Under the pieces are notes generated by a model. That model was not told the DNA's origin. It was given only the letters and a program-made list of their open reading frames with translations, and searched no databases. Shown piece after piece: positions 8,221 to 59,400 of a DNA stretch of 63,475 bases. Source of the stretch: Octopus bimaculoides (Eukaryota); contig NC_068988.1 in NCBI RefSeq assembly GCF_001194135.2, positions 93,972,045 to 94,035,519 on the forward strand, in the 5' to 3' direction. Within the stretch, counting starts at the first letter, position 1. Each line of letters starts with the position of its first letter. The position numbers and the translations under genes are program-made.

Positions 8221-9308
8221 CATTCAACTCCAGCATGGCCGCAGACTAATGGCTGACAAAAAGAAAACCAGGACCAGATTTAAAGTTGCCAAAGTTTGAT
8301 TTGAGGTTAATTTGGATGGTTATATTGAGACAAGCGATAGCAGAGAGATGCATTTTGTTGGTTCATCTTAAAATATTTGTGAAACAAGTGTCATTGCTGT
8401 CGTCTCCATTTCTTCCTTTTTATTATTATTATTTTTGTTTGATTAATCCCAACTCACTCATTCAATGGCTNNNNNNNNNNNNNNNNNNNNNNNNNNNNNN
8501 NNNNNNNNNNNNNNNNNNNNNNNNNNNNNNNNNNNNNNNNNNNNNNNNNNNNNNNNNNNNNNNNNNNNNNNNNNNNNNNNNNNNNNNNNNNNNNNNNNNN
8601 NNNNNNNNNNNNNNNNNNNNNNNNNNNNNNNNNNNNNNNNNNNNNNNNNNNNNNNNNNNNNNNNNNNNNNNNNNNNNNNNNNNNNNNNNNNNNNNNNNNN
8701 NNNNNNNNNNNNNNNNNNNNNNNNNNNNNNNNNNNNNNNNNNNNNNNNNNNNNNNNNNNNNNNNNNNNNNNNNNNNNNNNNNNNNNNNNNNNNNNNNNNN
8801 NNNNNNNNNNNNNNNNNNNNNNNNNNNNNNNNNNNNNNNNNNNNNNNNNNNNNNNNNNNNNNNNNNNNNNNNNNNNNNNNNNNNNNNNNNNNNNNNNNNN
8901 NNNNNNNNNNNNNNNNNNNNNNNNNNNNNNNNNNNNNNNNNNNNNNNNNNNNNNNNNNNNNNNNNNNNNNNNNNNNNNNNNNNNNNNNNNNNNNNNNNNN
9001 NNNNNNNNNNNNNNNNNNNNNNNNNNNNNNNNNNNNNNNNNNNNNNNNNNNNNNNNNNNNNNNNNNNNNNNNNNNNNNNNNNNNNNNNNNNNNNNNNNNN
9101 NNNNNNNNNNNNNNNNNNNNNNNNNNNNNNNNNNNNNNNNNNNNNNNNNNNNNNNNNNNNNNNNNNNNNNNNNNNNNNNNNNNNNNNNNNNNNNNNNNNN
9201 NNNNNNNNNNNNNNNNNNNNNNNNNNNNNNNNNNNNNNNNNNNNNNNNNNNNNNNNNNNNNNNNNNNNNNNNNNNNNNNNNNNNNNNNNNNNNNGTATAT
9301 ACACACAT

Positions 9309-13714: not shown

Positions 13715-13948
13715 TCTTTCCTTTATTTGTTTCAATCATTTGACTGCGGCCATGCTGGAGCACAACCTTTAGTCGATCAAATCGATCCCCAGGACTTATT
13801 CTTTGTAAGCCTGGTGCTTATTCAATCGGTCGCTTTTGCCGAACTGCTAATTTACGGGGATGTGAACACACCAGCGTCGGTTGTCAAGTGATGTTGGAGG
13901 GACAAACACAGACATACAAACATATATACACACATATACATATACACG

Positions 13949-23832: not shown

Positions 23833-24871
23833 CTATAGTATATAGTTTATAATTTAATTGTGACGTACAACTTGCAAACTACATCATCTTGAGGTCAGCA
23901 CAACTCTAGTCAGATTCTTCACAGGATAAAATAGAGTGCCAGCTACATTTTATACTCTTAAGAACCTGGAAACAGCTGCGCTGATGCCTAGATGAAAGAA
24001 TTTACCAAATTAAAATCGACTNNNNNNNNNNNNNNNNNNNNNNNNNNNNNNNNNNNNNNNNNNNNNNNNNNNNNNNNNNNNNNNNNNNNNNNNNNNNNNN
24101 NNNNNNNNNNNNNNNNNNNNNNNNNNNNNNNNNNNNNNNNNNNNNNNNNNNNNNNNNNNNNNNNNNNNNNNNNNNNNNNNNNNNNNNNNNNNNNNNNNNN
24201 NNNNNNNNNNNNNNNNNNNNNNNNNNNNNNNNNNNNNNNNNNNNNNNNNNNNNNNNNNNNNNNNNNNNNNNNNNNNNNNNNNNNNNNNNNNNNNNNNNNN
24301 NNNNNNNNNNNNNNNNNNNNNNNNNNNNNNNNNNNNNNNNNNNNNNNNNNNNNNNNNNNNNNNNNNNNNNNNNNNNNNNNNNNNNNNNNNNNNNNNNNNN
24401 NNNNNNNNNNNNNNNNNNNNNNNNNNNNNNNNNNNNNNNNNNNNNNNNNNNNNNNNNNNNNNNNNNNNNNNNNNNNNNNNNNNNNNNNNNNNNNNNNNNN
24501 NNNNNNNNNNNNNNNNNNNNNNNNNNNNNNNNNNNNNNNNNNNNNNNNNNNNNNNNNNNNNNNNNNNNNNNNNNNNNNNNNNNNNNNNNNNNNNNNNNNN
24601 NNNNNNNNNNNNNNNNNNNNNNNNNNNNNNNNNNNNNNNNNNNNNNNNNNNNNNNNNNNNNNNNNNNNNNNNNNNNNNNNNNNNNNNNNNNNNNNNNNNN
24701 NNNNNNNNNNNNNNNNNNNNNNNNNNNNNNNNNNNNNNNNNNNNNNNNNNNNNNNNNNNNNNNNNNNNNNNNNNNNNNNNNNNNNNNNNNNNNNNNNNNN
24801 NNNNNNNNNNNNNNNNNNNNNNNNNNNNNNNNNNNNNNNNNNNNNNNNNTATATATATATATATATATATG

Positions 24872-42085: not shown

Positions 42086-43088
42086 TCAGGTCATCCCATA
42101 AGTTCTGTCCGTTTTTACCTTTTTTTAAATTGAATGAAATTTAATAGTATTTTAGAATGTCTAATGGAATTTAAAATTATTTTTATGCATTTGTGTTCAT
42201 TTAACCTAATTAAATATTATTTTACAGAATAATAGAATTAAAATTTGTTTGATTGAAACCCTTTCTAACATGAAAGTATCCAAAGAGCATTTAAGGCACA
42301 TAATGCTTTATGAGTACAAAAAAGGAAACTCTGCAGCCGAATCGACTCGAAACATACACTCAGTTTATGGGGGAAAATGCTTGAACGAAAGAACGTGCAG
42401 GAGATGGTTTGCAAAATTCAGAAGTGGAGATTTCAGCCTTGAAGATAAAGATCGAACAGGACGTCTTGAGTTTGATGATAAGCTCCTTGAGGCATTACTT
42501 GAAGAAAATCCTGCATTATCAGTTGAAGAATTGGCAATAAAGCTTAGTTCAAACCATACAACTGTTCATCGTCATCTTCAACAGCTTGGAAAGGCTCCTA
42601 AACTTGGAAAATGGGTGCCTCATGAATTGTCCGAAAGCAACCGCTAATCTTGAGTTGACATCTGTTCTTCTATCCATTCTCGCGAACTCATTTCACCCTT
42701 TTTGGATAGACTTGTGACTGGTGACGAAAAATGGATCTTCTATCGAAATGTTAAATGTCGTAAACAGTGACTTGGTAAAAGGGGAAAAGCTCAACCACAA
42801 CTGAGAAGGGAACTTCCTGGAAAAAAGGTTCTTCTCTCTATCTGGTTGGATTGCAAAGGAGTAATTCACTTTGAATTCTTACCACCCAATGCAACAATCA
42901 ATACTCAAGTCTACTGTCAGCAATTAGAGCGTTTGAACCAAGCTTTGAAGAAAAAAAGACCCGCTTTAGTGAATCGAAAAGGAGTGATGTTTCATCAGAA
43001 CAATGCGCGACTCCACACTGCAAAGATCACATCACAGAAGATCGAAGAACTTGGTTGGGGAAAAATTCCTCATCCCCCTGATTCTTCC
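42086..43088 (+). pseudogene. mariner (DD34D) transposon, left TIR plus 3'-truncated transposase pseudogene
   Basis: TA then TCAGGTCATCCCATAAG at 42084-42102. ATG at 42270. Motifs WVPHEL, VTGDEKW, FHQNNAR (HQDNA) and PHPPDSSDHSPSN (PHPPYSPDLAPSD). Three in-frame stops and no frameshift. The second and third catalytic Asp read as Asn. No right TIR. Confidence 0.95.
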
Positions 43089-43452
43089 GACCATTCTCCT
43101 TCAAATTAGACTAGGCTGTCCCGTTCTGCCTCAGTTTTTGGGAATAGCTTCAGGTTGTCCATGAATAACAAGTAATTCAGTTTTCCCTAACCTCTTCCCA
43201 GATCATATCACAACTTTGTTTTCTGTAGTATTTCACTCGAGGGAATCATTCCCAGAACGAATATCAGTGGGGACACACTCTTCCCTTGGAAAATTCCCCT
43301 CTTGATTTTCATTTCTCCTTGTACTTGCTTCTTTGCTGTCAATTCCGTTCTCCAGCATTTCATGCTATTTCGTATAAGGCTTCTCATATTCTCTACTACT
43401 CCATACATTTCCATTGTTCTTATTATCCAGGAGTGTGATATCATAACGTATA
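43089..43452 (-). mobile_element. R4/Dong-clade (RLE-type) LINE, reverse transcriptase fragment
   Basis: Minus translation KKIYVMISHSWII...IKRGIFQGKSVSPLIFVLGMIP...GYDLGRG*GKLNYLLFMDNLKLF matches RT motifs KKAYDMVPHSW, RGIFQGDSLSPLLF and HLLFMDDLKLY. Confidence 0.9.
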
Positions 43453-43453
43453 T

Positions 43454-43468
43454 CTTCTTCTTCTTCTT

Positions 43469-43535
<67 letters not shown>

Positions 43536-43560
43536 GTAGTAGTAGTAGTAGTAGTTGTAG
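43454..43560. repeat. Compound (CTT)n(TTA)n(TAG)n microsatellite
   Basis: Direct reading; abuts the R4/Dong RT fragment. Confidence 0.98.
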
Positions 43561-43564
43561 TAAT

Positions 43565-43790
43565 ACCAATAGTAGTAGTAATACAGCGAGTTGGCAGTAT
43601 CCTTAGCACGCCAGGCTAAATATTTAGCGGCATTTCGTCCGCCCCCGCGTTCTTAGTTCCGATTCTGTGAGACCGACTTTTATCGGGGTCGATAAAATAC
43701 GTACCAGTTGAGCACTAGGGGTCGATGTAATCGGCTATCCTCTTTCCCCAAATTGCTGGCCTTATGCCAGAATGTGGAATTATTACTATT
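43565..43790 (+). mobile_element. SINE family B, diverged
   Basis: ttggcagtatccttagcacgcc...tcggggtcgataaaatacgtaccagttg...aaattgctggcctt, followed by (TTA)n. Confidence 0.75.
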
Positions 43791-51792: not shown

Positions 51793-52208
51793 AAAGCGGC
51801 GAGTTGGCAGAAACGTTAGCACGCAGGGCGAAATGCTTTGCAGTAATTCGTCTGCCGTTACGTTCTGAGTTCAAATTCCACCGAAGTCGACTTTGCCTTT
51901 CATCCTTTCGGGGTCGATAAATTAAGTACCAGTTACGCACTGGGATCGATGTAATCGACATAGTCCCTTTGTCTGTCCTTGTTTGTGCCCCTCTTTGTTT
52001 AGCCCTTTGTGGGCAATAAAGTAATAAGAAACGTAAGCGTGCCGGGCGACATGCTTAGCGGTGTTTCGTTTGTCTTTGTGTTCTGTGTTCAAATTCCGCC
52101 GAGGTTGACTTTGCTTTTCATCCTTTCGGTGTCGATACATTAAGTACCAGTTGCGTACTGGGGTCGATCTAATCCCAAAATTTCGGGCTTTGTGCCTAGA
52201 GTATAAAA
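51793..52208 (+). mobile_element. Two tandem SINE family B copies; the first has a different tail
   Basis: 51793-52025 (tail gtccctttgtctgtcc...gggcaataaag) and 52030-52208 (standard tail). Confidence 0.85.
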
Positions 52209-52751
52209 GAATGGTGGTAATGAATTTCTCTCTCACACTGATGACTTTCTTGGGGAGGACGGCGTTTTTCTTGCTGCCGCCTTGCTTCTCTGTCTCACAC
52301 ATCGTCACTCCTGTTGTTTTTACTGTTTTGTTACTGTTTTGGTTACTTCTACTGCTGTGGAGTTCTGTGGTGGTGGAAGATAGCGATAAGGAAGAGTTAT
52401 TTTTAATCCTATTTTTGGTAAAAGTCTATGAAATAAAATAAACTTGCCCTTTAAAAAGTATTTCCATGACAAAAAAAAAAAAAAAAGAAAAATTAGTAAA
52501 ATAAAATTGTGTTAGAAAAATCTTGGAAACTTTTGCAGTCCAGGCACTAACAGCAAAATCCATAAGAAAAACATTTTTTCGAGCTGACATTGACTGCAAG
52601 AAGAAGAGGAACGACGACAACAACAACAACAACAACAACAACAACAGCATACAACCTATAACACGTTGAATGATTGTTGGAAAAGACGGCTTGCTATTGG
52701 TGGTCATCTGGAAGATCTCCTGTATCTGGAGGCCAGTATTATTGTCTATAT

Positions 52752-53007
52752 CAGTGGTTCTCAACAGGGTTCCATATAAAATTTTGTCGTTAAAATTTAT
52801 ATGCAATAGATTGGTTTATATTTCTTCAATTCACGAAATATTTAAATTATTTTCTAATATAATTCTTCAGTATATCTAATTATTAAAAAAACCAAAAAAA
52901 AACCAATAGGCTTTTTTAAAACATCGAATGGCTATGAGGGTCCAGTAAAGTAAAAATAGGAAATTAGATTGATCCATAGGGCAAAAAAAAATGGCTAAAA
53001 GGCACAG
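52752..53007 (+). mobile_element. hAT (Charlie-like) non-autonomous element
   Basis: Starts CAGTGGTTCTCAAC. Internal ttttaaaacatcgaatggctatgagggtccag is shared with 57200-57225. Confidence 0.55.
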
Positions 53008-53770: not shown

Positions 53771-53801
53771 GCTAACAGATTTTTATATTTGTTTTGTTTA
53801 G
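53771..53801 (+). promoter_or_regulatory. Branch point, T-rich tract and AG acceptor of a 5'-UTR intron of the RD3-like gene
   Basis: GCTAAC at 53771-53776, T-rich tract, TTTAG ending at 53801, 28 nt before the ATG. Confidence 0.7.
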
Positions 53802-53829: not shown

Positions 53830-55116
53830 ATGTTTCAATCCGTGACGAAGTTTTTTACCAAACGAAATACAAAGCATCATAAAAGGTCATTTGATAAAGA
53901 TTACAATGCAGCGAACGCGTTCATACTTCTCGTCACAGAGAAAATGGAGGAATTATCAAATATCAAAACTCAAACTGCCAGCGATCGCTATGAAATTGAG
54001 TCTAATGAAAATAGCGAACAGAGTTCTGACAGTTACAGCTATTGCGATAACTTGAATACTAATGATTCTGCTGTTTATTACAAAAATAAAAATCTCTGTG
54101 ATTCACGCAGTGTTAGTGCAACAAATGTTAGAGAAAGGAGAAAACATTCGAGTTGTAATAAGAACGGATCTGTTTGTGAAAACGAAACACTCCAGAAAGA
54201 TATCATTTCTGCCGATAAATTCCCCGCAAATACACAAGTGGAATATGACCAGCTGAATAATCTACATGAATCAGGCTGTGCTAATTGGGATAATTCTAAA
54301 AAATGTATTAGCAGGAATAATTGCAAATTTAAGCGTCGAACTAAAGTTGATTATTCTTGGTTATTTGATAGAAAAAATATTCCACGATTGAACAGATTCG
54401 ACCGGGGGAAATTACGAGAATGTTGTCAGTTAATGACTTATGATCAGAGTATATTAGCATATGATGTACTTCAAAAACTCATTGAAGATATATCAGAACC
54501 GTCGGTTATCCCAGAAATATTAGATACCATTATTATGTATATACTTGGGCAAGAGAAAGAATCCGCAAGTTTTAAAGATCTCTTCAGGAGAAGAAACCTA
54601 ACCGAAATCTGCTGGCAAGGATACATGCGTCCCTTCGGCCTAATTTTATCAGCGCTTTTTCCGAAAAAATTTAAACAATCGCCTGATCCTGATCGTCAAA
54701 ATGAAGCAATCAAAATAGCAAGCGTTGTTAAAGAATCCCTTATGAAAAAATGCAATAAGGTTTTTGTGAATAAGGCTTCAACAGAAAGCGATGTATTCGA
54801 GTCACCAAATGAGGCTAAAGACATCAATGTAGTGTATGTTCAAAGAGTGGACCAGGACCGAGGACAAACAAGTGCACAGAAATCTTATGGGAATCAACAA
54901 TCATATAAACTTTGCAAAATAGATAAGTTTTATTTTAGAAATTCAAACAATATATTGTCAAATAGCATGTATAGATCTCAGATTTGCCGTTTACAACCTG
55001 CCAGCAGAGAAAGGATTAATAGTGAAGCACAATTCAGAAGAAGGAAAAGATTAATAAAGCGTCGTTCTCAAGCAGTAACTGTACGAGTGATTCGTGATTT
55101 CAACTCTAAGCCATAG
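53830..55116 (+). CDS. RD3: RD3 (retinal degeneration protein 3)-domain protein, divergent, 428 aa, single coding exon
   Basis: Only long, non-repetitive, stop-free ORF in the window. aa173-240 (VDYSWLFDRKNIPRLNRFDRGKLRECCQLM...LQKLIEDISEPSVIPEILDTIIMYIL) aligns with remembered human RD3 aa58-126 ([31 protein letters not shown]...[27 protein letters not shown]). N-terminal KRS...NAFILLVTEKMEEL resembles RD3 helix 1 (TRS...ETLMMELTGQMREA). ATG context GCAACATG with an in-frame TAA just upstream. The CDS is near certain; the family call is from memory. Confidence 0.8.
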   Translation: MFQSVTKFFTKRNTKHHKRSFDKDYNAANAFILLVTEKMEELSNIKTQTASDRYEIESNENSEQSSDSYSYCDNLNTNDSAVYYKNKNLCDSRSVSATNVRERRKHSSCNKNGSVCENETLQKDIISADKFPANTQVEYDQLNNLHESGCANWDNSKKCISRNNCKFKRRTKVDYSWLFDRKNIPRLNRFDRGKLRECCQLMTYDQSILAYDVLQKLIEDISEPSVIPEILDTIIMYILGQEKESASFKDLFRRRNLTEICWQGYMRPFGLILSALFPKKFKQSPDPDRQNEAIKIASVVKESLMKKCNKVFVNKASTESDVFESPNEAKDINVVYVQRVDQDRGQTSAQKSYGNQQSYKLCKIDKFYFRNSNNILSNSMYRSQICRLQPASRERINSEAQFRRRKRLIKRRSQAVTVRVIRDFNSKP

Positions 55117-55118
55117 AA

Positions 55119-55423
55119 AATAAACAATTAGAATAAATAAAGTTAACATCTGCCAATTTCGCCAGCATTTCTTATTTCTGACAATCTATAATTCATAGGA
55201 ATTCTTTGTTTCAGTGTTTGCATCTTTATTTTTATATATTCGGAATCCTATGATGAGACGAGAAACAAACACAAAGCAAAAAAAAAAAAACCCCAAAAAA
55301 CTGACATAAATAAAATATCTGAAAATTCAAAATATATTGTTGGTGGAAATACATAATATATTTTAGTATATAACAAAGCCATGCGCAATGTACGATGAGA
55401 AGACCATATTTCCTTGCAATAAA
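55119..55423 (+). terminator. Candidate polyadenylation signals of the RD3-like gene
   Basis: AATAAA at 55119, 55132/55136, 55309 and 55418. The background is AT-rich, so which one is used is unknown. Confidence 0.4.
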
Positions 55424-57692: not shown

Positions 57693-57781
<89 letters not shown>

Positions 57782-58922
57782 TATACACGTTGAAACAAAG
57801 TAAAAAAACAAAACAAAACAAGATATAGAATAAAAAAAAATATTCAAGAATTAAAACTAAAAGATAATTTTCTTTTGAATTGCCGGGGAAAATACTAAAA
57901 AAAAAACAAAAAAAAAACAACAACTCAAAAACGGAAACAAAAGAAAAAAGTAAATAAAAACAAGGTTGGTCGCTGCACAATCTCTGTTGAATTATTTGCA
58001 GGCTGTAAACTGCAAGTGTATTAAAGCTTTCGCCAGAGCATAACACTACACGTAGCTTTGTGTCTGTGTTTAGTGGAACGAACACGCAAACATTTTCTAA
58101 ATTGCTTTTGTTGAATAAAATTAAATGTCGTTCTGATTGCTAGATCAGATCATATGTAAAACAAAACAACAACAACAAACAACAATACTAACTACAAAAA
58201 CAACCACAACAATAACAACAACAACGACGACGAAGGCGGCGACAGCAACACCAAATATTGAAAACAAATTATCGAAAAAAGTGCAAAAAGAAAAACGAGA
58301 TGCCGTCAATATAGAGGACGGATCCGCCAACCTTGCCCCCACCCCACCTCAACCATCAGAAATACTTGCGCAAAATAAAAAGCTCCATAGCATCAGCTTC
58401 CACCCCCAAAACCCACCCCACCCTCGCATCTACCCGCCACGAACAATAACTAGCACCAGCGCAACTAATTTATGATCACAACAACCTCTGCCAAAGTATT
58501 CACCCCCAATAAATAGCAACACCGCCATACACAATCCGGACCAGTCGTTGCAATTCACAATATCTCAACCACATCCGCAACAACAACAACAACAACAACA
58601 ACAACTACTACTACTACTACTACTACTACTGTCGTAGGACAAATCGCCTACATTAACAACAGTAACAAACGCAACGAAAGTGGTCGTTCGATGTGCTAGA
58701 AATAGCAGTTAAATTTATTTCGAATCCCAACGTAACCTCATAGAATAAGAGAAAGAATTTGAGCTACATAACAACAAGAACAACAACGATAACGTGACAA
58801 TACTAATAAAAGAAAGAAAAAAGAGCTGTAGAAAACGAAACACAAACAGTCACAGAGACAATGGCTGCGGCAATTGTTTTGTAAAATTACTTCACACAAC
58901 GAAAAATGTATCAACAGTGAAC

Positions 58923-58923
<1 letters not shown>

Positions 58924-58999
<76 letters not shown>

Positions 59000-59109
59000 T
59001 AATAATAATAATAAAAAATAATAATAATAATAATAATAATATTAATAATAACAATAATAATAATAACAATAAATAATAATAATAAATAATAATAATGATA
59101 ATAATAATG

Positions 59110-59149
<40 letters not shown>

Positions 59150-59356
59150 TGATAATAATAATTTTTATTAGCCACAGGGGCATAAATGAGGGGGACATCA
59201 CAAGAACAGTTAGCAAATTGTGTTGGGATTTTACATAAAGGATGGGAAGAAAGAAATGGAAAAGTCAATGAAATGCGATAAAAGTCTACAGTAATAATAA
59301 TGGTAATAATAATAATAATAATGAAGATGATGATGATGAGGATGATGATGATGATG

Positions 59357-59400
<44 letters not shown>
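58924..59400. repeat. Long (AAT)n and (GAT)n compound microsatellite region
   Basis: (AAT)n at 58924-59162; (AAT)n/(GAT)n at 59290-59400. Confidence 0.97.

What the first reader, a model, noticed from the sequence alone, without database searches (positions are those of the whole stretch)
53830..55116. Divergent RD3-family gene in an apparent cephalopod genome
Seen: an intact 428-aa ORF with the exact VDYSWL word and a helix pattern that follows RD3. Established: vertebrate RD3 binds retinal membrane guanylyl cyclases (RetGC), inhibits them and is needed for their trafficking in ciliary photoreceptors. Cephalopod retinal photoreceptors are rhabdomeric and signal through Gq/PLC. Inference: this protein either regulates another receptor guanylyl cyclase or has a new role. 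It is the strongest biological lead in the window.
Basis: partly seen in the sequence, partly recalled or inferred. Interest (0 to 1): 0.75.

Follow-up and report, generated by a model that had tools for sequence, protein, structure and literature searches.

The report
Divergent RD3-like gene in octopus
This Octopus bimaculoides gene encodes a conserved, unannotated protein whose central helices are a distant relative of RD3, which escorts and silences membrane guanylyl cyclases in vertebrates and nematodes; this extends a known family to cephalopods and does not reveal a new kind of system.

Summary
Window 53830..55116 (+) is an intact 428-aa ORF in Octopus bimaculoides chromosome CM046608.1. 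It is the only long real ORF in the window and it contains VDYSWL at aa 173-178.

The gene is real. Uninterrupted orthologues exist in O. vulgaris/sinensis, another octopus and Argonauta, plus two more distant relatives. dN/dS is 0.30-0.44 overall and 0.09-0.20 in aa 169-245.

RD3 homology of aa ~169-251 is well supported but remote:
- Pfam RD3 is sub-threshold (14-17 bits against a cutoff of 27).
- hhalign against vertebrate RD3 gives P about 1e-4 to 2e-5. That signal disappears if the motif is deleted.
- Two motif-free downstream blocks each pick the motif's register as their single best placement, and essentially no decoy matches them.
- Predicted helices match RD3 alpha2-alpha4.
- Foldseek ranks human RD3 (6DRF) first twice, but not significantly.

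Differences from RD3: twice the size, about 120 variable residues between the N-terminal helix and the motif, extra conserved modules, and only 2 of 8 RetGC1-contact residues kept.

The most likely function is inferred: a chaperone and inhibitor of receptor-type guanylyl cyclases, as for RD3 and C. elegans RDL-1. RDL-1 already works outside photoreceptors, so the rhabdomeric-eye "puzzle" is weaker than stated. Expression is untested.

The parts
53830..55116 (+). Complete single-exon coding sequence (428 aa plus TAG stop) of the RD3-like protein
   Evidence: ORF listing. Identical protein is on record for GCA_001194135.2. Intact uninterrupted orthologous ORFs in six other loci. dN/dS is 0.30-0.44.
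53887..53964 (+). Conserved N-terminal amphipathic helix (aa 20-45, FDKDYNAANAFILLVTEKMEELSN). It is a candidate counterpart of RD3 helix alpha1, but this is not proven.
   Evidence: Near-invariant in four octopods and recognisable in P0005/P0006. AlphaFold predicts a helix at 21-60 with pLDDT 70-78. Sequence match to RD3 alpha1 is not significant (P = 0.3). In the gapless scan its best placement is RD3 alpha4, with alpha1 second.
53965..54333 (+). Variable, predicted-disordered linker (aa 46-168). RD3 has nothing comparable here: only about 8 residues separate the end of alpha1 (V51) from Y60 of the motif.
   Evidence: Low conservation and many indels. pLDDT is 21-30 with no predicted secondary structure. 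The linker is about 60 aa shorter in P0005/P0006.
54346..54369 (+). VDYSWLFD motif (aa 173-180), matching the invariant GVDYSWL of RD3 (human residues 57-63)
   Evidence: Y175 S176 W177 L178 F179 D180 are invariant in all six cephalopod-type sequences. G57 V58 D59 Y60 W62 L63 are invariant in 23 vertebrate RD3 sequences. The two motifs are aligned by Pfam and hhalign.
54334..54582 (+). RD3-like helical core (aa 169-251): the motif plus three helices that correspond to RD3 alpha2, alpha3 and alpha4
   Evidence: Pfam RD3 at aa 167-245. hhalign P = 1.2e-4 for the whole protein and 1.7e-5 for the core alone, and the real score exceeds all 200 and all 150 column shuffles. Anchored register test. 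Lowest dN/dS in the protein, 0.09-0.20. Helices at 189-201, 204-218 and 224-240 with pLDDT 69-83.
54583..54675 (+). Octopod-conserved block (aa 252-282, FRRRNLTEICWQGYMRPFGLILSALFPKKFK) with no significant RD3 counterpart
   Evidence: Conserved in four octopods and absent or divergent in P0005/P0006. Its best gapless placement falls on RD3 149-163, putting R-P-F opposite S-P-F, but this is not significant.
54829..54843 (+). Small conserved VVYVQ element (aa 334-338) inside an otherwise variable C-terminal half
   Evidence: V335 Y336 V337 are invariant in all six sequences. No RD3 counterpart was found.
55030..55113 (+). Conserved basic C-terminal tail (aa 401-428, QFRRRKRLIKRRSQAVTVRVIRDFNSKP)
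   Evidence: Conserved among octopods with dN/dS 0.19-0.45. No family hit. Its role is unknown; a membrane-binding or localisation signal is only a guess.
53772..53801 (+). Candidate 3' splice site just upstream of the ATG: CTAAC branch-point-like element (53772-53776), polypyrimidine tract, and AG at 53800-53801. It implies a non-coding 5' exon further upstream.
   Evidence: Sequence read directly. The polypyrimidine tract plus AG is conserved in Octopus species and Argonauta, and P0005/P0006 loci have analogous sites. This is an inference only: no spliced transcript was available.
55119..55141 (+). Three overlapping AATAAA hexamers 3-25 nt after the stop codon, possibly poly(A) signals
   Evidence: Read from the sequence. 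Such hexamers are common in AT-rich DNA, so this is weak evidence.

Best explanation
The ORF is a functional, single-coding-exon gene of Octopus bimaculoides. It encodes a lineage-expanded, remote homologue of RD3.

The conserved centre (aa ~169-251) has the invariant VDYSWL loop followed by three helices that correspond to RD3 alpha2-alpha4. A conserved N-terminal helix (aa 20-45) probably supplies the fourth helix of the bundle, tethered by a roughly 120-residue disordered linker.

By analogy with vertebrate RD3 and C. elegans RDL-1, the protein most likely binds the cytoplasmic part of one or more octopus receptor-type (membrane) guanylyl cyclases in the ER/Golgi, keeps them inactive in transit, and promotes their delivery to a sensory compartment such as the cilia of chemosensory or other sensory neurons.

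Shown here: the gene is real and under purifying selection, and the core is homologous to RD3.
Inferred: the four-helix packing, the cyclase partner, the trafficking and inhibition activity, and the tissue of action.
My confidence is about 0.9 for core homology and about 0.5 for the cyclase-chaperone function.
For: Gene reality:
- 432 open codons against 179 for the next longest ORF.
- Intact uninterrupted orthologous ORFs in O. vulgaris, O. sinensis, an unnamed octopus, Argonauta hians and two more distant samples.
- dN/dS is 0.30-0.44 overall and 0.09-0.20 in aa 169-245.

Homology:
- Pfam RD3 is the only family hit at E<=10 for the window protein and the best hit for 2 of the 6 relatives; three others gave only unrelated weak hits and P0006 was not scanned. 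E = 0.034 and 0.0068 in the predicted stretch.
- hhalign against 23 vertebrate RD3 sequences: score 38.3, P = 1.2e-4. Column shuffles give 14.5 +/- 2.7 (max 26.7, n = 200) and the reversed profile gives 17.0.
- Core alone: P = 1.7e-5, z = 10 against shuffles made within the core.
- Octopods alone (P = 2.4e-4) and P0005/P0006 alone (P = 1.7e-3) find RD3 in the same register. A vertebrate-only RD3 HMM hits all six sequences, P from 4e-6 to 1.4e-3.
- Motif-free anchored test: aa 182-204 is best of 173 placements at RD3 68-90, and 1 of 47,229 decoys reaches its score. aa 215-251 is best of 159 placements at RD3 102-138, and 0 of 38,955 decoys reach it. Both lie within 1-2 residues of the motif's register.
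- Family-invariant residues coincide under the hhalign alignment: Y60/W62/L63 = Y175/W177/L178, R78 = R192, C85 = C199. Bundle-core positions stay hydrophobic: F100 -> Y211, V114 -> I227, F118 -> L231, L122 -> I235.
- Helix boundaries match RD3 alpha2-alpha4.
- 6DRF is the top Foldseek hit of 350,542 chains for both models.

Function by precedent:
- RD3's helical core binds and inhibits RetGC, and R158-S170 couples the complex to trafficking (PMC13400361).
- RDL-1 traffics non-visual receptor cyclases in nematode sensory neurons.
Against: - Pfam scores are below the gathering cutoff (14.4 and 16.7 bits against 27).
- Sequence searches against the PDB do not reach 6DRF.
- An exhaustive profile search of 1.84 billion representatives, and an iterated search, found no annotated RD3 protein.
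- The hhalign signal falls to noise when aa 171-181 is removed.
- Both Foldseek matches are non-significant with TM about 0.34, and the 3Di+AA score is not independent of the motif.
- The N-terminal helix cannot be matched to RD3 alpha1 by sequence.
- Only I97 and Q102 of the eight mapped RetGC1-contact residues are identical, S120 becomes T, and R99 and R101 become A and D. The partner interface may therefore differ.
- There is no significant counterpart of the RD3 R158-S170 trafficking segment.
- No expression, localisation or binding data exist.
Confidence: 0.6

Rival explanations
1. It is a true RD3 homologue that has been repurposed. The helical scaffold is kept, but the cyclase-binding surface has been replaced and new modules added (long linker, aa 252-282 block, basic tail). 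It would then serve another partner or process, for example a cilium- or mitochondria-related role like the one reported for mouse Rd3 in spermatids, or a nuclear role suggested by the basic tail.
For: Five of the eight RetGC1-contact residues are not conserved, including R99 and R101. The protein is twice the size of RD3 and has lineage-specific conserved blocks. Mammalian Rd3 has a reported role in round spermatids that involves mitochondria rather than RetGC (PMC10943590). There is no significant match to the RD3 trafficking segment.
Against: The best-conserved elements are the ones shared with RD3: the YSWL loop and alpha2-alpha4. In both functionally studied lineages (vertebrates and nematodes) the family acts on membrane guanylyl cyclases. 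Interface residues would be expected to co-evolve with a divergent cyclase, so their change alone does not show loss of the function.
Confidence: 0.25
2. The resemblance to RD3 is chance or convergence. On this reading it is a cephalopod-restricted helical protein that happens to contain a DYSWL word.
For: Pfam is sub-threshold. The hhalign signal depends on aa 171-181. Foldseek is not significant. Large database searches do not connect it to RD3. By my own estimate, a five-residue word such as DYSWL is expected about once per proteome by chance.
Against: The motif is the most conserved run in both families. Two downstream blocks that exclude the motif independently choose the register it predicts, each as rank 1 of about 160-170 placements, with at most 1 of about 40,000 decoys reaching the score. 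R78/R192 and C85/C199 coincide, and the helix boundaries match. Two cephalopod sub-lineages hit RD3 separately.
Confidence: 0.1
3. It is a non-functional ORF: a dead retrocopy or an annotation artefact that is not expressed.
For: The coding region has no introns. No transcript evidence could be obtained: the Logan contigs are collinear with the genome, end in repeats and have no poly(A) tail. Public records annotate it only as 'hypothetical protein'.
Against: The ORF is intact in seven loci spanning Octopus, Argonauta and more distant relatives. dN/dS is well below 1 and lowest in the core. The start codon and an upstream acceptor-like site are conserved. An ORF of this length is not expected by chance.
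Confidence: 0.03

Closest known systems
Vertebrate RD3 (retinal degeneration 3; Pfam PF14473; NMR structure PDB 6DRF)
   Same: Invariant (V)DYSWL loop. [DE]-R-x-x-[LI]-x-[DE]-x-C in the helix corresponding to alpha2. Hydrophobic core positions of alpha3 and alpha4 (F100, V114, F118, L122). Helix lengths and spacing for alpha2-alpha4. A long N-terminal helix at residues ~21-51. About 25% identity over 93 aligned columns.
   Different: 428 aa against about 195 aa. About 120 variable residues lie between the N-terminal helix and the motif. Extra conserved modules at aa 252-282, VVYVQ and a basic tail. Only 2 of 8 RetGC1-contact residues are identical. No detectable R158-S170 trafficking segment or C-terminal WSMPEF motif. 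The coding sequence appears to be in one exon, whereas human RD3 is split over two coding exons (from my own knowledge, not checked here). The Pfam score is below the cutoff.
C. elegans RDL-1 (RD3-like), which regulates trafficking of receptor guanylyl cyclases to sensory cilia
   Same: An invertebrate RD3 relative in an animal without vertebrate-type photoreceptors. This is the functional precedent for action on non-visual receptor cyclases such as GCY-9, GCY-22 and DAF-11.
   Different: The founding paper (Martinez-Velazquez & Ringstad 2018, PMC5776970) is not held. Whether RDL-1 shares the cephalopod insert or tail is unknown.
Vertebrate RD3L (RD3-like paralogue)
   Same: From my own knowledge, it belongs to the same Pfam family and has a similar helical core.
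   Different: It was not retrieved or compared here. The 120 listed hits of the human RD3 search were all named RD3 apart from one 'RD3-like' teleost entry.

Membership tests
RD3 (Pfam PF14473) | Score at or above the Pfam gathering cutoff (27 bits) | tested here: not met
   14.4 bits (E = 0.034) for the window protein and 16.7 bits (E = 0.0068) for P0003. Four other relatives show no reported hit. RD3 is nevertheless the only or best Pfam hit, and it falls in the right place.
RD3 (Pfam PF14473) | Invariant G-V-D-Y-S-W-L loop between helices alpha1 and alpha2 | tested here: met
   V173-D-Y-S-W-L178 is present. Y/S/W/L are invariant in all six cephalopod-type sequences, and V/D/Y/W/L are invariant in 23 vertebrate RD3 sequences. 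G57 is replaced by K172.
RD3 (Pfam PF14473) | Significant profile-level similarity across helices alpha2-alpha4, not only at the motif | tested here: met
   Local hhalign without the motif is not significant (P = 0.32-0.33). In the register-anchored test, aa 182-204 and aa 215-251 are each rank 1 at the predicted register, with 1 of 47,229 and 0 of 38,955 decoys reaching the score.
RD3 (Pfam PF14473) | Elongated four-helix bundle fold as in PDB 6DRF | tested here: inconclusive
   Predicted helices match alpha2-alpha4 in length and position, and there is an N-terminal helix at 21-60. Foldseek puts 6DRF first for both models, but with E = 1.0 and 0.53, TM 0.34-0.35 and rmsd about 15 A. Mean pLDDT is only 39 and 44.
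RD3 (Pfam PF14473) | Helix alpha1 (core residues L29, L33) lying directly before the motif | tested here: not met
   The only candidate helix (aa 20-45) is separated from the motif by about 120 residues. It does not align significantly to alpha1 (P = 0.3), and its best gapless placement is alpha4.
RD3 (Pfam PF14473) | Hydrophobic bundle-core residues of alpha3 and alpha4 (F100, V114, F118, L122) | tested here: met
   Under the hhalign alignment they map to Y211, I227, L231 and I235. Y211 and L231 are invariant in the cephalopod family.
RD3 (Pfam PF14473) | RetGC1-contact surface (H89, C93, P95, I97, R99, R101, Q102, S120) | tested here: not met
   Identical: I97 = I208 and Q102 = Q215. Conservative: S120 -> T233. 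Different: H89 -> T203, C93 -> gap, P95 -> Q206, R99 -> A210, R101 -> D212.
RD3 (Pfam PF14473) | C-terminal trafficking segment (human R158-S170) | tested here: inconclusive
   The best gapless placement of aa 256-270 is RD3 149-163, putting R267-P-F269 opposite S160-P-F162. It is collinear but not significant, and hhalign confidence there is zero.
RD3 (Pfam PF14473) | Binds and inhibits a membrane guanylyl cyclase and is needed for its trafficking | not testable with these tools
   This needs co-expression, binding, activity and localisation experiments.

The most novel reading that the evidence does not exclude
Cephalopods carry a re-engineered RD3 scaffold. The bundle is split by a long disordered tether, the cyclase-contact surface is rewritten, and new conserved modules are added (aa 252-282 and the basic tail). 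On this reading it controls cGMP signalling in a cephalopod-specific setting, for example in sucker or olfactory chemosensory cells or in rhabdomeric photoreceptors, or it acts on a partner other than a guanylyl cyclase. That would make it a handle on the little-explored membrane-cyclase biology of cephalopod sensory systems.
Probability: 0.25. Interest if true: 0.55.

Novelty: new variant of a known kind. Interest (0 to 1): 0.35.

Why it matters
RD3 is a disease gene (Leber congenital amaurosis type 12). Its only studied invertebrate relative is nematode RDL-1.

A cephalopod branch of the family would show which parts are ancient: the YSWL loop, the R78 and C85 positions, and the hydrophobic core of alpha3 and alpha4. 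It would also show which parts are lineage-specific: the RetGC1 contact residues and the C-terminal trafficking segment.

It gives these 'hypothetical proteins' a testable function, and it points to receptor guanylyl cyclases as regulated cargo in cephalopod sensory cells. No paper in the searchable library mentions RD3 together with cephalopods.

It does not overturn anything. An RD3 relative outside ciliary photoreceptors is already precedented.

Tried and rejected
- Sequence searches against PDB chains, with the single protein and with the four-sequence profile, did not reach RD3.
- The exhaustive profile search of 1.84 billion representatives found only three proteins, all of this same family. 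The iterated search with five sequences added only P0006 and no annotated RD3, even at E <= 10.
- The human RD3 search listed only vertebrates among its 120 displayed hits, so no invertebrate bridge sequences were obtained.
- Foldseek on two AlphaFold models put 6DRF first, but without significance. I did not count this as structural proof.
- I chose not to add vertebrate RD3 rows to the AlphaFold alignment, because that would have been circular.
- N-terminal helix against RD3 alpha1: not significant. Global hhalign: meaningless. Permissive hhalign extension into the C-terminal region: zero confidence.
- Transcript evidence from the Logan contigs L003-L007: they are collinear with the genome through the putative acceptor, end in microsatellites or repeats, and have no poly(A). 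They are uninformative.
- The run and assembly accessions could not be traced in the literature, so the species behind P0003, P0005 and P0006 are unknown. Calling P0005/P0006 'decapodiform' would be a guess.
- The founding RDL-1 paper is not held.
- No tRNA or Rfam family lies in the window.
Full report
**1. The observation**

VDYSWL is at aa 173-178.

The ORF is not a chance feature. The longest N-free open frames in the window are 432 codons (this one) and then 179, and about 1e-10 ORFs of this length are expected from the base composition. The many other 'ORFs' over 300 aa in the mechanical list run across 16 assembly gaps made of N.

The exact protein is on record for Octopus bimaculoides assembly GCA_001194135.2, chromosome CM046608.1, near 94.0 Mb. 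The 'apparent cephalopod genome' is therefore confirmed.

**2. It is a real gene under selection**

Full-length relatives are:
- P0002, from the O. vulgaris and O. sinensis assemblies (83% identity);
- P0003, from an unnamed octopus assembled independently in five SRA runs (73%);
- P0004, from Argonauta hians (44%).

An exhaustive profile search and an iterated search added two more distant proteins with the same layout. These are P0005 (362 aa, ENA ERZ21867824) and P0006 (375 aa, ERR3431203). Their species could not be determined.

All seven loci carry uninterrupted ORFs. Nei-Gojobori dN/dS is 0.30-0.44 over the whole protein and 0.09-0.20 in aa 169-245. The variable stretches (aa 46-168 and 283-400) run higher, at 0.22-0.64.

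Conservation falls into blocks:
- an N-terminal helix, aa 20-45;
- a central block, aa 169-251;
- an octopod-specific block, aa 252-282;
- a short VVYVQ element;
- a basic C-terminal tail.

About 30 nt upstream of the ATG there is a polypyrimidine tract followed by AG, with a CTAAC element in Octopus. It is conserved in Octopus species and Argonauta, and the P0005/P0006 loci have analogous sites. This suggests a non-coding 5' exon and a single coding exon, but it is an inference.

No transcript evidence was obtainable. The Logan contigs are collinear with the genome through that site, end in repeats, and lack poly(A) tails.

**3. Is it related to RD3?**

*Direct evidence is weak.*
- Pfam RD3 (PF14473) is the only family hit for the window protein. 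It covers aa 167-245 against profile positions 48-128 of 129, but scores 14.4 bits (E = 0.034) against a cutoff of 27.
- P0003 scores 16.7 bits (E = 0.0068). Three other relatives (P0002, P0004, P0005) gave no reported RD3 hit, and P0006 was not scanned.
- PDB sequence searches do not reach the RD3 structure.
- Very large database searches do not link the family to annotated RD3.

*Profile-profile evidence is better.* I confirmed my remembered human RD3 sequence against 6DRF, collected vertebrate RD3 sequences, and aligned 23 of them from mammals to sharks and teleosts.
- hhalign of the six-sequence cephalopod alignment against this profile gives score 38.3, P = 1.2e-4, aligning aa 152-246 to RD3 43-139.
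- Column shuffles give 14.5 +/- 2.7 (max 26.7, n = 200) and the reversed profile gives 17.0.
- The core alone gives P = 1.7e-5, with z = 10 against shuffles confined to the core.
- Octopods alone (P = 2.4e-4) and the P0005/P0006 pair alone (P = 1.7e-3) each find RD3 in the same register.
- A vertebrate-only RD3 HMM hits all six sequences at the same place, with per-sequence P from 4e-6 to 1.4e-3.

*A caveat, and how I addressed it.* Deleting aa 171-181 (the VDYSWL block) drops hhalign to noise (12.3, P = 0.32), and aa 182-260 alone gives P = 0.33. The local-alignment statistics therefore rest on one short motif.

Because the motif fixes the register in advance (offset 115), I scored motif-free blocks at every gapless placement on the RD3 profile:
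- aa 182-204 has its single best score of 173 placements at RD3 68-90 (offset 114). The score is 13.6 against 5.0 for the next best.
- aa 215-251 has its single best score of 159 placements at RD3 102-138 (offset 113). The score is 12.9 against -3.2 for the next best.
- Of decoy windows taken from the rest of the octopus protein at all placements, 1 of 47,229 and 0 of 38,955 reach those scores.

Two independent blocks choosing the register the motif predicts is strong evidence that the whole alpha2-alpha4 core is homologous, and not only the motif.

*Residue-level agreement*, using the hhalign alignment, the family invariants and the published structure (PMC9493048):
- Y60/W62/L63 = Y175/W177/L178.
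- R78 = R192 and C85 = C199. These are invariant in both families.
- The bundle core stays hydrophobic: F100 -> Y211, V114 -> I227, F118 -> L231, L122 -> I235.
- Of the eight residues whose mutation abolishes RetGC1 regulation, only I97 and Q102 are identical and S120 becomes T. H89, C93, P95, R99 and R101 are not conserved.

*Structure.*
- AlphaFold with six sequences gave a poor full-length model (mean pLDDT 38.8).
- A trimmed model of aa 1-310 was better, with pLDDT 69-83 in the helices.
- Predicted helices at 189-201, 204-218 and 224-240 match RD3 alpha2 (75-87), alpha3 (90-107) and alpha4 (111-139) at the motif offset. A helix at 21-60 parallels alpha1 (21-51).
- Foldseek against 350,542 PDB chains ranks 6DRF first for both models, but with E = 1.0 and 0.53 and TM about 0.34. 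I count this as consistent but inconclusive, and it is not independent of the sequence motif.
- The N-terminal helix cannot be matched to alpha1 by sequence (P = 0.3). Its best gapless placement is in fact alpha4.

**4. Mechanism**

The following is established for the family:
- The RD3 helical core up to G148 binds RetGC and blocks its activation.
- Residues R158-S170 couple the complex to trafficking (PMC13400361).
- C. elegans RDL-1 is described as the RD3 orthologue and controls the localisation of non-visual receptor cyclases, namely DAF-11 (PMC12541453) and GCY-22 (bioRxiv 10.1101/861955).

The best-supported reading is therefore that the octopus protein chaperones and silences one or more receptor-type guanylyl cyclases on the way to a sensory compartment. 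This is inferred from homology only. The altered contact residues, and the lack of a recognisable trafficking segment, leave real room for a changed partner or role. Mouse Rd3 also has a reported mitochondria-linked role in spermatids (PMC10943590).

**5. Comparison and novelty**

It works like, and descends from, the RD3 scaffold. It fails several membership criteria of canonical RD3:
- the Pfam cutoff;
- alpha1 lying next to the motif;
- the RetGC1 contact surface;
- overall size.

I therefore class it as a new variant of a known kind: an expanded, cephalopod-type RD3-like family currently labelled 'hypothetical protein'. No paper in the library mentions RD3 together with cephalopods.

**6. 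Verdict**

- Observation: confirmed.
- Interpretation: partly supported.
- Core homology to RD3: about 0.9.
- Cyclase-chaperone function: about 0.5.
- Interest: moderate to low (0.35). It is a useful annotation and a clean experimental lead, not a new kind of system.

Noticed in passing
window 42210-42644 (+), possibly continuing to 43191-43616: A 145-aa ORF carries the HTH_48 domain of Mos1/mariner transposases (E = 2.3e-23). It is probably a degraded mariner-type transposon copy.
   Followed up: partly
window, 16 N-runs (e.g. 8471-9294, 24022-24849, 27980-28979): 5,616 N bases in assembly gaps create spurious long ORFs on both strands in the mechanical ORF list, and they depress the apparent GC content in those windows.
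   Followed up: yes
L003 1-139 against window 13732-13871, 31329-31445 and 27046-27111: The 5' end of the other-octopus contig matches three dispersed places in the window at 75-82% identity. This is a short interspersed repeat shared between octopus species.
   Followed up: no
window 54595-54639 (aa 256-270): NLTEICWQGYMRPFG resembles RD3 twice over: L257-T-E-I-C-W262 against RD3 L138-T-R-Q-W142, and R267-P-F269 against S160-P161-F162 in the R158-S170 trafficking segment. The matches are collinear with the core but not statistically significant, and the block is absent from P0005/P0006.
   Followed up: partly
window 53890-53982 (aa 21-51): In a gapless profile scan the N-terminal helix scores best against RD3 helix alpha4 (start 111), not alpha1 (start 19, second best). 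It is unclear whether this is only generic amphipathic-helix similarity or says something about the origin of this helix.
   Followed up: partly
window 51925-52425 and 52429-52815 (- strand): Two adjacent ORFs of 167 and 129 codons on the minus strand, separated by a single stop codon, lie just upstream of the gene. Neither has a Pfam hit. They may be one decayed reading frame of an unclassified repeat.
   Followed up: partly
window 57696-57778 and 58923-59162: Long perfect or near-perfect microsatellites lie downstream of the gene: (CA)41 and (ATA)80. There are further trinucleotide arrays at 58160-58630 and 59321-59400.
   Followed up: no
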